Part shown: positions 4,540 to 59,413 of the stretch, piece by piece
Layout of the letters: each line of letters starts with the position of its first letter
Numbering within the stretch: the first letter of the stretch is position 1
IMG/VR virus record: IMGVR_UViG_3300032782_000001
Span: 124,001 to 188,000 of that record
Reading direction: 5' to 3' (one strand)
Length of the DNA: 64,000 nucleotides
Made by a program: the position numbers and the translations under genes
The notes under the pieces: model-generated
Databases searched by the model: none
The model's input: the letters and a program-made list of their open reading frames with translations, nothing else
What the model was told of the DNA's origin: nothing

Positions 4540-4564
4540 TTCATCCTCCAGCGTAATGTGACTC

Positions 4565-4897
4565 ATGAAGCCTGATCAGATCATTTCGCTCACCGAGAAA
4601 TACGAAGAAGCTTTCCGGCGCGTCGGTACCAGGCCTAAGGAGATCGACAGGAGCATTACGCCTCCTGGTATGCAGAAGGCATGCGAACACGCAATGTGGA
4701 TGCTCCCTAAGATCCGGGAGATCCTCCAGGAGGGAAAGCATGCGAAAGCTGAAAGGTGGTTTTGTTTCGTACAGAGCGTTATGTGGCAGGCAGGATTCTT
4801 CAGCATCAATGATATGCGTGATCACAACCGGACCCCCGAAGAGGAAAAACCTGTTAGCCCGAATCCGGATGCCTGTTCTAATATCCTTGAAGATTAG
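4565..4897 (+). CDS. Hypothetical protein
   Basis: 110-aa ORF preceded by gTAATGT-N5-ATG. Confidence 0.6.
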   Translation: MKPDQIISLTEKYEEAFRRVGTRPKEIDRSITPPGMQKACEHAMWMLPKIREILQEGKHAKAERWFCFVQSVMWQAGFFSINDMRDHNRTPEEEKPVSPNPDACSNILED

Positions 4898-5325
4898 CTG
4901 TCCATTACCTCCGTCGCAATCTTGGACATGTCAGCGTTAGCCTCAAGCAGGACCCACAAGACGCGGGCATCTGCCGCTACCATAAATTTCTCGTGTCGCC
5001 AATCCTGGCAGTACCAGTCATAACCTTCGTAAGTTTTCTTTCGTTCTCCTTGATGGAGACGGGTCCTACAAGGACGTACTTGCAGCATTACATGTCCGTT
5101 ACTAAGTTCAGGGAGAACTTCGAAATGGAGCATGGCGATAGTCGTGGAAGTCGGGTTTGAAGAATAATCTTTGTGCTCGGATGTTGACCATTTCACCCAA
5201 AAACGGTTACCACCACTGCAATGAATATGGATATGGTAGGAACAAAATTCAACGGATGCTTTTAGCCTGTCAAATTCTTGGATCAGGTGAGAAATTACTG
5301 AGTCATGTAGCTCACTGAACATCAT
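4894..5325 (-). CDS. Hypothetical protein with VMDS C-terminal tag
   Basis: Ends TEVMDS*; start set at 5325 from gTATTAT-N5-ATG, which also avoids overlap with the divergent RF gene. Confidence 0.6.
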   Translation of the reverse strand: MMFSELHDSVISHLIQEFDRLKASVEFCSYHIHIHCSGGNRFWVKWSTSEHKDYSSNPTSTTIAMLHFEVLPELSNGHVMLQVRPCRTRLHQGERKKTYEGYDWYCQDWRHEKFMVAADARVLWVLLEANADMSKIATEVMDS

Positions 5326-58181: not shown

Positions 58182-58228
58182 CCTTCACTAGTTTCCGGGA
58201 CACTCAGCGCACGGATGTAATTTGATTT

Positions 58229-59413
58229 ATGCCTTCTAAGAGTTTCTATGATGTGCTTGGAGTGAACCAAGACGCTTCTGAAGAGGACATCAAGAAAGCT
58301 TACAGGAAGCTGGTACTGGAATTTCATCCGGATAAGAATCCAGGAAGCTCGAGTGCAGAAGCTCGCTTCAAAGAAGCTACGCAAGCTTATCAAGTTTTGA
58401 TCGATCCCAAGAAGCGATCAGCATATAATCTTTCCCAAGTACCTGGCATGGAAGGATTTAGGGGATTCGAAGGCTCATTCAATGGAGTGGATCTTGGAGG
58501 GCCGCTAGGTGATATGCTTCAAGATCTATTTAGTCATATGGATGGGGTTGGATTCCGATCCAAGCCCAGGAATCCCGGATTCCGCAATAACCCGCGCGAA
58601 AGAGATCAACATTCGCGACCAGGAGAAGATGTTGAGACAGAAGTATTTTTGACACTAGAAGAAGCTGCATTGGGATGCCGGAAGCGCATTCTCGTTAAAT
58701 CTTCCGATGCTCCTATCGTGTGTACTACTTGTCGTGGAAACGGAAGCAGGCCAGGGACCCCTAGAGGTCCGTGCAGTGCATGCGCTGGGAAGGGAAAAAG
58801 AGTCGGCTTCACAGGGAAGTCATATTCTTCTTGTCCTGCATGTAAAGGAAGTGGGACCCAGCCAGTAGTCGCTTGCATTGCGTGTAAGGGCAAAGGTTTC
58901 ATCAATATAGATAGGGAAATTGACGTAAAAATCCCGGCAGGTGTGGAGTCCGGTCATAGACTTAGACTGGCTGGACTTGGCTCTCCTGGAATTAGATCAG
59001 TACCAGGAGACTTATTCGTAGAAGTCCAAGTCGCTCCCCATCCAATTTTCCAACGTAAAGGGAAAGACCTTTTCACCACTGCTTCAGTGCCTCTCATTGG
59101 TGTAGTTCGGGGGACTCAGATCCCCGTAGAAGTAGTAGGTGACGGTCCTATTCTTGTGCGAATTCCGCCAGGTACCCAACCTGGAGAAACCATCGTAGTC
59201 AAAGAAGCAGGTCTGATTGGAATTCTCGATAGATCACGTGGAGACTTGCATGTGACTGTGAAGGTTCATATCCCTCGCGAAATGTCAGAGAGAGCCCACA
59301 AGCTACTAGATGAACTCGCAGAAGAATTTGCAAGGACCGGGAATCGTCAGGAGCAAATCGAAGGGAATATCGCCGACGAAGTCTACGACGCATTCAAAAT
59401 TACCCGGCCGTAA
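58229..59413 (+). CDS. dnaJ: Chaperone DnaJ (class I)
   Basis: J-domain HPD, G/F region, four CxxCxGxG, C-terminal domain. Confidence 0.95.
   Translation: MPSKSFYDVLGVNQDASEEDIKKAYRKLVLEFHPDKNPGSSSAEARFKEATQAYQVLIDPKKRSAYNLSQVPGMEGFRGFEGSFNGVDLGGPLGDMLQDLFSHMDGVGFRSKPRNPGFRNNPRERDQHSRPGEDVETEVFLTLEEAALGCRKRILVKSSDAPIVCTTCRGNGSRPGTPRGPCSACAGKGKRVGFTGKSYSSCPACKGSGTQPVVACIACKGKGFINIDREIDVKIPAGVESGHRLRLAGLGSPGIRSVPGDLFVEVQVAPHPIFQRKGKDLFTTASVPLIGVVRGTQIPVEVVGDGPILVRIPPGTQPGETIVVKEAGLIGILDRSRGDLHVTVKVHIPREMSERAHKLLDELAEEFARTGNRQEQIEGNIADEVYDAFKITRP

What the first reader, a model, noticed from the sequence alone, without database searches (positions are those of the whole stretch)
4553..58231. 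Pervasive G-TAnnnT-N5-7-start motif: a largely leaderless transcriptome
Seen before starts at 4565, 5325(-), 7661(-), 8834(-), 8862, 12935, 13606, 15317, 18426, 19567, 22054, 27838, 29950, 33661, 37594, 39925, 41248, 44805, 47327(-), 47379, 49509, 50531, 52536 and 58229. These starts lack an SD, and each has a G just 5' of the hexamer. Known: a -10 box at this distance puts the TSS on the start codon (leaderless mRNA, 70S initiation). Inference: many individually promoted genes that could bypass SD- or initiation-factor-dependent control, possibly read by the phage RpoD-like sigma.
Basis: partly seen in the sequence, partly recalled or inferred. Interest (0 to 1): 0.68.

Follow-up and report, generated by a model that had tools for sequence, protein, structure and literature searches.

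The report
Start-adjacent G-TAnnnT promoters in huge phage
A 436-kb environmental phage and its relatives place a minimal promoter-like box (G-TA-n-n-n-T) 5-7 bases before the start codon of about one gene in five, which most likely yields messenger RNAs with no leader; this layout is known from Deinococcus-Thermus bacteria and Thermus phages, but here it has a stricter motif and sits in a new phage lineage.

Summary
All 24 listed starts carry GTAnnnT, then 5-7 nt, then ATG or GTG, and none has an SD 4-mer. In the window the 5-nt and 6-nt forms occur 14 and 20 times against 4.2 expected.

Across the 436-kb phage genome the motif precedes 12.6% of first start codons but only 0.24% of internal in-frame ones. 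The G is obligatory, and TTG starts are excluded.

GTAnnnT is the most depleted of 256 gapped words inside genes, on both strands. It also lies 15-40 nt upstream of SD-led genes. It recurs at orthologous genes in relatives with about 50% protein identity. These points indicate a DNA-level -10-type promoter, not a ribosome-binding signal.

"Largely leaderless" is overstated. About 17% of genes genome-wide and 23% in the window have the start-adjacent form. SD-led genes and at least two other promoter classes also exist.

No RNA data exist, so no transcription start is mapped. Which sigma factor reads the motif is unresolved.

Verdict: a new variant of a known architecture.

The parts
4553..4559 (+). 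GTAATGT box, 5 nt before ATG 4565 (110 aa)
5331..5337 (-). GTATTAT box, 5 nt before ATG 5325(-) (143 aa)
7667..7673 (-). GTAGCGT box, 5 nt before ATG 7661(-) (153 aa). The G003 homologue also has GTAATGT-N5-ATG.
8840..8856 (.). Back-to-back boxes GTAACAT (-, 8840-8846) and GTAAGAT (+, 8850-8856) serve the divergent genes 8834(-) and 8862(+), which lie only 27 nt apart.
12923..12929 (+). GTAAGCT box, 5 nt before ATG 12935 (84 aa; weak as a gene)
13592..13598 (+). GTAACGT box, 7 nt before ATG 13606 (phosphoribosyl transferase-like, 192 aa)
15304..15310 (+). GTACTGT box, 6 nt before ATG 15317, just after two tRNA genes
18413..18419 (+). GTAACCT box, 6 nt before ATG 18426 (HNH endonuclease)
19554..19560 (+). 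GTAACGT box, 6 nt before ATG 19567 (65 aa)
22041..22047 (+). GTAAACT box, 6 nt before ATG 22054 (230 aa)
27826..27832 (+). GTACCGT box, 5 nt before ATG 27838. The G003 homologue has GTACGGT-N6-ATG.
29936..29942 (+). GTATCGT box, 7 nt before GTG 29950. The G003 orthologue is also box-preceded.
33648..33654 (+). GTACGGT box, 6 nt before ATG 33661. The G003 orthologue has GTATAGT-N5-ATG.
37581..37587 (+). GTAGTCT box, 6 nt before ATG 37594 (AAA ATPase, 441 aa). The orthologues in G001 and G003 use an SD instead.
39911..39917 (+). GTATGAT box, 7 nt before ATG 39925. The G003 orthologue has GTAGGGT-N6-GTG.
41236..41242 (+). GTAATAT box, 5 nt before ATG 41248 (150 aa)
44792..44798 (+). GTAAACT box, 6 nt before ATG 44805. 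G003 has GTAAGCT-N6-ATG. G001 has GTAAGTT 18 nt upstream with an SD in between.
47333..47372 (.). Divergent pair: GTAGCGT (-, 47333-47339) for ATG 47327(-), and GTATTTT (+, 47366-47372) for ATG 47379(+)
49497..49503 (+). GTAACGT box, 5 nt before ATG 49509 (77 aa)
50519..50525 (+). GTATTGT box, 5 nt before ATG 50531 (117 aa)
52523..52529 (+). GTATTGT box, 6 nt before ATG 52536 (63 aa; doubtful gene). It lies back-to-back with the promoter of the sigma-2 gene.
58173..58223 (.). Both genes are box-preceded in all three genomes compared.
61098..61104 (-).
28751..29953 (+). Phage sigma-1: RpoD-like, with regions 1.2, 2, 3 and 4. It has H/K/D at E. coli sigma-70 positions 437/440/458. Candidate reader of the box.
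51734..52399 (-). Phage sigma-2: 221 aa, with a Pfam match to region 2 and an ECF-like two-domain model. About 60% identical orthologues occur in all 12 related genomes found with it.

Best explanation
GTAnnnT (consensus G-T-A-n-n-g-T) is the -10 element of a minimal promoter class with no -35 element. It is used by this 436-kb phage and its close relatives.

T, A and T occupy the positions that sigma-70-family factors read as -12, -11 and -7. The obligatory G sits at -13.

At about 96 genes the box ends 5-7 nt before ATG or GTG. Bacterial RNA polymerase would therefore start at or within a base or two of the start codon's purine. The resulting mRNA has no leader and no SD, and would be translated by the leaderless route, in which the ribosome binds a 5'-terminal AUG or GUG.

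The same box placed 15-40 nt upstream gives short SD-containing leaders at other genes.

Shown here: the motif, its position, its selectivity, its conservation, and its avoidance inside genes on both strands. Inferred: that it is bound by a sigma factor, that the start site is the start codon, and that translation is leaderless.

No phage RNA polymerase was detected. The enzyme is therefore probably the host core polymerase with either the phage RpoD-like sigma-1 (my preference) or the host primary sigma.
For: (1) Position-specific enrichment. 69 of 546 first start candidates carry the box at d=5-7 (43, 20 and 6 by spacing), against 5 of 2088 internal in-frame ATG/GTG codons, about 50-fold. 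The window counts are 14 and 20 against 4.2 expected.

(2) Strict gapped specificity. Variants with one mismatch at G, T or A are not enriched (0.5x, 1.0x and 0.7x); a mismatch at the last T gives 2.6x. G003 shows the same pattern. The fixed T, A and T with a free middle are the bases that sigma region 2 reads, which is not a base-pairing pattern.

(3) Start-site logic. The box precedes 14% of first ATG, 8% of first GTG and 1% of first TTG. The base at -1 is a pyrimidine in 68 of 96, 28 of 44 and 60 of 90 sites.

(4) SD exclusion. Only 3 of 96 box-preceded genes have an SD 4-mer, while GGAG peaks at -10/-9 before other genes.

(5) DNA-level selection. With a codon-phase-aware expectation, GTAnnnT is the most depleted of 256 gapped words inside genes. 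In G000 the O/E is 0.69 on the sense strand and 0.73 on the antisense strand; in G003 it is 0.73 and 0.64; in G001 it is 0.76 on the sense strand. Between genes it is the most enriched word in G000 and G003.

(6) It works away from start codons. In the sense orientation it is enriched 15-40 nt upstream of strong-SD genes: 46 sites against 12 antisense and about 27 from control words.

(7) Divergent gene pairs lie only 20-62 nt apart with a box for each gene. Two pairs share a GTAC palindrome.

(8) Conservation without alignable DNA. Among reciprocal best hits at about 50% protein identity, G000-G003 gives 19 pairs with the box on both sides out of 37 (odds ratio 7.0, p=2e-6), and G000-G001 gives 10 of 26 (p=0.003). 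DNA polymerase A, DnaJ, NAD ligase and others keep the box in all three genomes.

(9) Twelve related genomes pooled give 567 matches against 361 for the control pattern. Two more distant huge phages give 103 against 120.

(10) No Pfam-detectable phage RpoB, RpoC or T7-type polymerase is present, but there are two sigma genes.

(11) Experimental precedent. In Deinococcus, TANNNT 6-7 bp before ORFs acts as a sufficient -10 promoter for leaderless mRNAs (PMC12340547, PMC4007540). Most transcripts of Thermus phages YS40 and Lalka27a start on the A or G of the initiator codon (bioRxiv 10.64898/2026.04.20.719267).
Against: No transcript 5' end has been mapped. The only public runs holding this DNA are two wetland DNA metagenomes.

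The modal spacing is 5 nt, one less than the 6-7 nt seen in Deinococcus. The exact start base is therefore uncertain.

Four fixed bases are too little information to define a promoter on their own. Even after depletion, about 1100 copies remain inside genes. Some further determinant is unrecognised.

The spacing of 5-7 nt also matches where an SD would sit.

Many box-preceded genes lie in same-strand arrays with gaps of about 27 nt and no enrichment of terminators. A processing signal could produce the same picture.

Antisense depletion is weak in G001 (O/E 0.92).

The gene calls are my own rough ORF picks, so the percentages are approximate.
Confidence: 0.75

Rival explanations
1. The box acts on RNA as a non-SD translation-initiation element. 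A ribosomal component or a phage-encoded factor would recognise GUAnnnU at the usual ribosome-binding-site distance on ordinary polycistronic mRNAs.
For: The box sits where an SD would sit, 5-7 nt before the start. It is mutually exclusive with SD. Many box-preceded genes are embedded in same-strand arrays with short gaps. No transcription start data exist.
Against: The motif is gapped, with a free middle, which does not suit rRNA pairing. GUA has no complement in the canonical 16S 3' tail (my own knowledge of that sequence). The word is depleted on the antisense strand of genes as strongly as on the sense strand in G000 and G003. The same box occurs 15-40 nt upstream of genes that have their own SD between box and start. 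Divergent genes 20 nt apart share a GTAC palindrome. TTG starts are excluded and -1 is a pyrimidine, as expected of transcription start rules.
Confidence: 0.07
2. The box marks an endoribonuclease processing site. Cleavage would trim polycistronic transcripts to leaderless or short-leader mRNAs.
For: Box-preceded genes usually follow another same-strand gene after about 27 nt. Neither sigma-70-type promoters nor intrinsic terminators are enriched in the window: 12 against 17.4, and 17 against 18.5.
Against: The fixed bases coincide exactly with the -12, -11 and -7 determinants of sigma-70-family -10 elements. Divergent pairs with 20-27 nt gaps would need long antisense transcripts through the neighbouring gene. 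The box is the most enriched word between genes in both orientations pooled, and it is avoided on both strands inside genes. I did not search for a candidate nuclease.
Confidence: 0.08
3. The box is simply the host's ordinary -10 element, read by the host primary sigma as in Deinococcus-Thermus or Actinobacteria. On this view the phage copies host gene architecture and no phage sigma is involved.
For: The architecture matches D. radiodurans and D. deserti (PMC12340547, PMC4007540). Thermus phages mirror their host in this way. Early phage genes must be read by a host holoenzyme. Box-preceded genes include typical early or middle functions: DNA polymerase A, clamp loader, ligase and DnaJ.
Against: TAnnnT without the G is not enriched at all (0.5x in G000; 2.6% against 2.0% in G003), unlike the Deinococcus-Thermus motif. 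The phage's sigma-2 gene is driven by a textbook TTGTTA-17-TGATATAAT promoter with a leader and an SD, and similar TTGnnn-17-TAGACT sequences lie upstream in G003 and G002 by my reading. This suggests that the host primary sigma uses -35 elements. The host is unknown, so its promoters could not be examined.
Confidence: 0.3
4. The pattern is an artefact of chance or composition, for example upstream stop codons TAA/TAG overlapping the 'TA', or ORF-definition bias.
For: With d=6 the TAn triplet is in frame with the start, and many d=6 sites use TAA or TAG as the in-frame stop that bounds the ORF.
Against: Nine of the 24 window boxes are TAT or TAC. The dominant spacing, d=5, is out of frame. Enrichment is about 50-fold over internal decoys and zero of 100 shuffles reach the observed counts. 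The box is conserved at orthologues in genomes of 50% and 57% GC.
Confidence: 0.01

Closest known systems
The '-10-motif adjacent to ORFs' of Deinococcus-Thermus (D. radiodurans, D. deserti, T. thermophilus): TANNNT directly upstream of leaderless genes (PMC12340547; PMC4007540)
   Same: A -10-like hexamer with invariant positions 1, 2 and 6. There is no conserved -35 and no SD. The start codons are ATG or GTG. It affects a large minority of genes and coexists with SD-led genes.
   Different: Here a G immediately 5' of the hexamer is obligatory, and TAnnnT without it is not enriched. The modal spacing is 5 nt rather than 6-7. The carrier is a clade of huge phages of unknown host, not a bacterial phylum. 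Function is not shown experimentally here.
Leaderless transcripts of Thermus phages phiYS40 and Lalka27a (bioRxiv 10.64898/2026.04.20.719267, citing Sevostyanova et al. 2007)
   Same: These are phages in which many mRNAs begin at the A or G of the initiator codon. They have distinct temporal promoter classes, including a -10-type late element with G at hexamer position 5 (TAGGGT), which resembles the G preference seen here (49 of 96 sites).
   Different: Those phages are not related to this one as far as tested, and their hosts belong to a phylum already rich in leaderless genes. Their late class has a conserved C at -25. Here no upstream position is conserved.
Single-element promoters of the phiEco32 sigma gp36 (tAATGTAtA, start site 6-8 bp downstream) and the bipartite GTAAtg-16-aCTA promoters of the phage 7-11 sigma (PMC8948821)
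   Same: A phage-encoded sigma on host core polymerase reads a short -10-like element that contains GTA and needs no -35. The second promoter class found here (CGTAArTTC-N12-CGTAyys) resembles the 7-11 type in form.
   Different: The sigma proteins were not shown to be homologous. Those transcripts were not reported as leaderless ('leaderless' does not occur in that paper). The consensus outside GTA differs.
Mycobacterial and other actinobacterial leaderless genes with TANNNT -10 elements (PMC4633059)
   Same: A -10-only promoter next to ATG or GTG, with translation starting from the 5'-terminal start codon.
   Different: No G is required at -13 (my recollection of that literature). It is a host-genome feature, not a phage one.

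Membership tests
sigma-70-family -10 promoter element | Invariant T(-12), A(-11) and T(-7) with a free middle (TAnnnT) | tested here: met
   Mismatches at T or A abolish enrichment (1.0x and 0.7x). A mismatch at the last T cuts it from 53x to 2.6x. G003 shows the same.
sigma-70-family -10 promoter element | Transcription starts about 6-9 nt downstream of the hexamer | not testable with these tools
   No RNA run holds the phage. The purine of the start codon lies 6-8 nt downstream, and -1 is a pyrimidine in about 68% of sites.
sigma-70-family -10 promoter element | Acts on DNA, so spurious copies are selected against in either orientation | tested here: met
   GTAnnnT is the most depleted of 256 gapped words on the sense and antisense strands of genes in G000 and G003, and on the sense strand in G001. 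It is the most enriched word between genes.
Canonical sigma-70 promoter (-35 TTGACA plus -10) or extended -10 (TGnTATAAT) | A conserved -35 hexamer 16-18 nt upstream, or TG at -15/-14 | tested here: not met
   No information content anywhere from -45 to -3 relative to the hexamer in 100 aligned sites. The G is at -13, directly abutting the T. Canonical promoter matches are not enriched: 12 against 17.4 in the window, and 82 against about 96 genome-wide.
Leaderless genes of the Deinococcus-Thermus or actinobacterial type | A -10 box ends about 5-7 nt before the start codon, and there is no SD | tested here: met
   Spacing counts are 43, 20 and 6 at 5, 6 and 7 nt. An SD 4-mer occurs in 3 of 96 and in none of the 24 listed sites.
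Leaderless genes of the Deinococcus-Thermus or actinobacterial type | The start codon is AUG or GUG at the 5' end | tested here: inconclusive
   The codon preference fits: ATG 14%, GTG 8%, TTG 1%. The 5' end itself is unmapped.
Leaderless genes of the Deinococcus-Thermus or actinobacterial type | TANNNT alone is the motif | tested here: not met
   [A/C/T]TAnnnT is not enriched (0.5x in G000; 2.6% against 2.0% in G003). The G is required.
Promoters of phage-encoded sigma factors (phiEco32 gp36 type) | The phage encodes a sigma, and the promoter is a single -10-like element specific to the phage | tested here: inconclusive
   Two sigma genes are present. The motif is present in 12 relatives that share sigma-2 and absent from 2 more distant ones, but these relatives form one clade, so the association is not independent.

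The most novel reading that the evidence does not exclude
The clade runs a private expression channel. Its own RpoD-like sigma-1 has changed residues in region 2.4/3.0 (H437, K440 and D458 in E. coli numbering), shared by G000 and G003. This sigma would read G(-13)-TAnnGT as a stand-alone promoter that host sigma ignores. It would produce leaderless mRNAs that need neither an SD nor the host's leadered initiation pathway. The ECF-like sigma-2 would read the separate bipartite CGTAArTTC-N12-CGTAyys class at the genome ends. The result would be a three-tier sigma cascade (host sigma, then sigma-2 and sigma-1) in an uncultivated 436-kb phage.
Probability: 0.3. Interest if true: 0.75.

Novelty: new variant of a known kind. 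Interest (0 to 1): 0.58.

Why it matters
Transcription signals of uncultivated huge phages are essentially unknown. This work gives a promoter word that can be scanned for, is supported by several independent sequence statistics, and is conserved across at least a dozen genomes of 130-430 kb.

It has three practical uses. It corrects gene starts, since the box pins the true initiator. It predicts that a fifth of the genes are made from leaderless mRNAs. It also supplies ready templates, such as the 62-nt divergent region between DNA polymerase A and DnaJ, for testing which of two phage sigma factors rewires the host polymerase.

The gapped-word avoidance test, which ranks depletion inside genes on both strands, found the motif without any knowledge of gene starts. 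It may be reusable for other phages.

Tried and rejected
RNA evidence. The single run search found only two wetland DNA metagenomes and no RNA. I therefore did not use read laying, because DNA contigs cannot show transcript starts.

Host identification. Relatives cannot be drawn for a virus record. The Atlas neighbours of sigma-1 are spread over Pseudomonadota, Myxococcota, Thermodesulfobacteriota and others. PDB similarity is nearly equal to E. coli, Thermus and Bacillus primary sigmas. The host stays unknown.

Canonical signals. Sigma-70-type promoters and intrinsic terminators are not enriched. The idea of 'individually promoted and terminated' units could not be supported on the terminator side.

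A -35 or other upstream element for the box: none found, apart from 10 of 90 G003 sites that also have GTA 21 nt upstream.

Sigma-2 as a region-4-less sigma of the gp55 or gp36 kind: not supported. The AF2 model (pLDDT 66) has two helical domains, and the weak Foldseek hits (E of 0.04 or more) are two-domain ECF sigmas. There was no PDB sequence hit.

5'-end folding. Box-preceded genes are only slightly less structured over the first 40 nt. The difference is significant in G001 alone, so it carries little weight.

Stop-codon artefact: rejected (see the rival explanations).

Temporal class. PHROG scans show box-preceded genes among replication, repair and metabolic functions, but also a collagen-like fibre. 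The largest SD-led genes are mostly unannotated. No clean early/late split could be shown.

More distant huge phages, LR756511.1 and LR745208.1, show no signal.

All were re-sent in permitted form or replaced by fixed-spacing patterns.
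Full report
**Context.** The window is bases 124001-188000 of a 436,316-bp IMG/VR virus record with direct terminal repeats. The record comes from a wetland metagenome and is about 50% GC. The window holds a replication and expression module:
- DNA polymerase A, 55284-58166(-)
- DnaJ, 58229-59413
- RecA, DnaB and an AAA ATPase
- two sigma-factor genes
- three tRNAs and a tmRNA

No Pfam-detectable RpoB, RpoC or T7-type RNA polymerase is present in the genome. Transcription should therefore depend on host core polymerase.

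**Observation.**
- All 24 listed starts have G-TA-n-n-n-T ending 5, 6 or 7 nt before ATG (GTG at 29950). None has an SD 4-mer.
- The fixed-spacing patterns occur 14 times (N5) and 20 times (N6) in the window, against 4.2 +/- 2.0 in dinucleotide shuffles. No shuffle out of 100 reached either count.
- Genome-wide, GTANNNT-Nd-ATG counts are 73, 56 and 34 at d=5, 6 and 7, against about 29 at other spacings. Matches at d=5-6 are followed far more often by long ORFs.

**Specificity.** I picked 546 long ORFs without reference to the motif and compared their first ATG/GTG with internal in-frame ATG/GTG codons.
- The strict box precedes 69 of 546 first starts (43, 20 and 6 at d=5, 6, 7) and 5 of 2088 internal codons.
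- One-mismatch variants are not enriched: no G, 0.5x; no T, 1.0x; no A, 0.7x. Loss of the last T leaves 2.6x.
- The G is therefore as obligatory as the three bases that sigma-70-family factors read at -12, -11 and -7.
- The box precedes 14% of first ATG, 8% of first GTG and 1% of first TTG.
- The base before the start codon is a pyrimidine in about two thirds of sites, and hexamer position 5 prefers G.
- No position from -45 to -3 is conserved, so there is no -35 and no canonical TGn.

**How many genes.** By my rough call, 96 of 549 ORFs (17%) have the start-adjacent box, and 21 of 91 in the window. Only 3 of the 96 also have an SD 4-mer. GGAG peaks at -10/-9 before other genes. 'Largely leaderless' is therefore too strong.

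**DNA-level or RNA-level.** Four results argue for a promoter.
1. With a codon-phase-aware expectation, GTAnnnT is the most depleted of all 256 words of the form XYZnnnW inside genes. O/E is 0.69 (sense) and 0.73 (antisense) in G000, and it is depleted in all three phases on both strands. In the relative G003 it is again the lowest on both strands (0.73 and 0.64). In G001 it is the lowest on the sense strand, at 0.76. Between genes it is the most enriched word in G000 and G003. A translation signal would not be avoided on the antisense strand.
2. Upstream of 251 strong-SD genes in the three genomes, the box is enriched in the sense orientation at 15-40 nt. There are 46 sites, against 12 antisense and about 27 from control words, and the SD lies between box and start. 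The box therefore also works without an adjacent start codon.
3. Divergent gene pairs lie only 20-62 nt apart with one box each. Two pairs, at genome 340756/340777 and 417986/418007, share a GTAC palindrome.
4. The gapped pattern is the one expected of sigma region 2, not of base pairing.

**Conservation.**
- DNA polymerase A led to G001 (362,524 bp, 57% GC, 61% identity), where the gene is again preceded by a box, GTATTTT-N5-ATG.
- G001 and G003 (393,220 bp) show the same peak at d=5-6 for ATG, for GTG in G003 only, and not for TTG.
- Among reciprocal best hits at about 47-50% identity, box-preceded genes tend to stay box-preceded. G000-G003 gives 19 of 37 against 20 of 153 (odds ratio 7.0, p=2e-6). 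G000-G001 gives 10 of 26 against 12 of 103 (p=0.003).
- DNA polymerase A, DnaJ, NAD ligase and several small genes carry a box in all three genomes, while the hexamer interior differs.
- Clear switches between box and SD also occur at orthologues, for example 37594. This is expected of two interchangeable ways to start a gene.
- Twelve genomes that share a sigma-2 orthologue give 567 pattern matches against 361 for the reversed control. Two more distant huge phages give 103 against 120. The trait belongs to this clade, not to huge phages in general.

**Other promoter classes.**
- The sigma-2 gene has a textbook TTGTTA-17-TGATATAAT promoter, a 16-bp-arm inverted repeat, and an SD. Similar TTGnnn-17-TAGACT sequences lie upstream of the orthologues in G003 and G002; this is my reading of the upstream sequence printed, not a scored scan.
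- A bipartite class, CGTAA(A/G)TTC-N12-CGTAyys, is followed by GGAGGTGA and a start codon. It has about 22 clear members, all at the genome ends (434 kb to 45 kb). It shows as a sharp peak at 21 nt in the CGTA-CGTA distance spectrum and is shared by G003 and G007.

**Who reads the box.** This is unresolved.
- Sigma-1 is RpoD-like and has all regions.
- Aligned to E. coli sigma-70, it keeps Y430, W433 and W434, and also the ANLRLV stretch that I recall as part of the T-7 pocket. It has H at 437, K at 440 and D at 458.
- I recall these positions as contacting -12 to -14. That is my memory of the sigma-70 literature and was not tested here.
- The G003 orthologue shares H, K and D. The G001 sigmas do not.
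- Sigma-2 models as a two-domain ECF-like sigma at modest confidence. It fits the bipartite CGTA class better.
- In Deinococcus a -10-only box suffices for the host sigma, but E. coli sigma-70 needs a -35 (PMC12340547). The canonical promoter of sigma-2 hints that this host is of the second kind. That favours a phage sigma, but weakly.

**Comparison with known systems.** The architecture is the experimentally validated one of Deinococcus-Thermus: TANNNT 6-7 bp before about a third of ORFs, sufficient as a promoter, giving leaderless mRNA (PMC12340547, PMC4007540). It is also that of Thermus phages YS40 and Lalka27a (bioRxiv 10.64898/2026.04.20.719267). PhiKZ has no leaderless transcripts and AR9 has long UTRs (PMC8244752, PMC5312081). 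The differences here are the obligatory G, the 5-nt modal spacing, and the carrier, a clade of uncultivated huge phages. I file it as a new variant of a known kind.

**Limits.** No transcript data exist. The host is unknown. The gene calls are my own greedy ORF picks. The association with sigma factors rests on one clade.

Noticed in passing
G000 genome coordinates 416-44996 and 433526-434523 (outside the window), e.g. 23086, 34323, 35250, 44972 (+) and 13276, 20893, 21208 (-): There is a second promoter-like class, bipartite: CGTAA(A/G)TTC, then 12 nt, then CGTA(T/C)(T/C)(C/G), then about 6 nt, then GGAGGTGA, then 3-6 nt, then ATG or GTG. It has about 22 clear members, all near the genome ends. 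The CGTA-CGTA distance spectrum peaks sharply at 21 nt (36 against about 6). G003 and G007 share it; LR756511.1 and LR745208.1 do not.
   Followed up: partly
window 52430-52509 (minus strand): The sigma-2 gene is preceded by a textbook TTGTTA-17-TGATATAAT promoter. A perfect inverted repeat with 16-bp arms follows (TCTCTACCAATTTCCA / TGGAAATTGGTAGAGA), then the SD GGAGG. The orthologue in G003 has TCTACnnGGTAGA palindromes in the same place, which suggests an operator.
   Followed up: partly
window 15122-15198 and 15223-15296 (+): There are two tRNA genes with anticodon UCA (ARAGORN calls them SeC; they are of normal tRNA length). Yet TGA is the commonest stop codon of the phage, closing 296 of 549 ORFs. 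They could be suppressors. Their purpose is unknown.
   Followed up: partly
window 17433-17809 (+); 10863-10937 (+): The phage encodes a tmRNA (Rfam 111.9 bits) with the tag ANDNGALRIAA, and a tRNA-Ile with anticodon UAU.
   Followed up: no
G000 340756(-)/340777(+) and 417986(-)/418007(+): In two divergent gene pairs the start codons are 20 nt apart and the two boxes overlap in a shared GTAC palindrome: GTACAAT/GTACACT and GTACGGT/GTACAGT.
   Followed up: partly
window 46888-46903 (-); G000 223769(-), 312870(-), 42506(+): Near-identical box-plus-start cassettes recur: ggtccgGTAGGGTgtcctcATGGGG twice, and GTAGAGTccttcATGGG twice. A paralogous gene family seems to have been copied together with its promoter.
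   Followed up: no
orthologue pairs, e.g. window 37594 against G001 42326 and G003 86363; G000 405099 against G001 253049: Orthologous genes switch between the start-adjacent box and a strong SD (GGAGG) across genomes. In G001 the orthologue of window 44805 has the box 18 nt upstream with AGGAG in between.
   Followed up: yes
window 12039-12067 (+) and 17064-17091 (-): These are the two best canonical sigma-70-type matches in 4000-23999: TTGACA-17-TATCAT (11 of 12) and TTGACG-16-TAGAAT with TG. Such matches are not enriched overall.
   Followed up: no
window 18426-19082 (+): An HNH endonuclease gene has its own start-adjacent box, overlaps the upstream gene by 4 nt, and has a 52% identical homologue in G003.
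   Followed up: no
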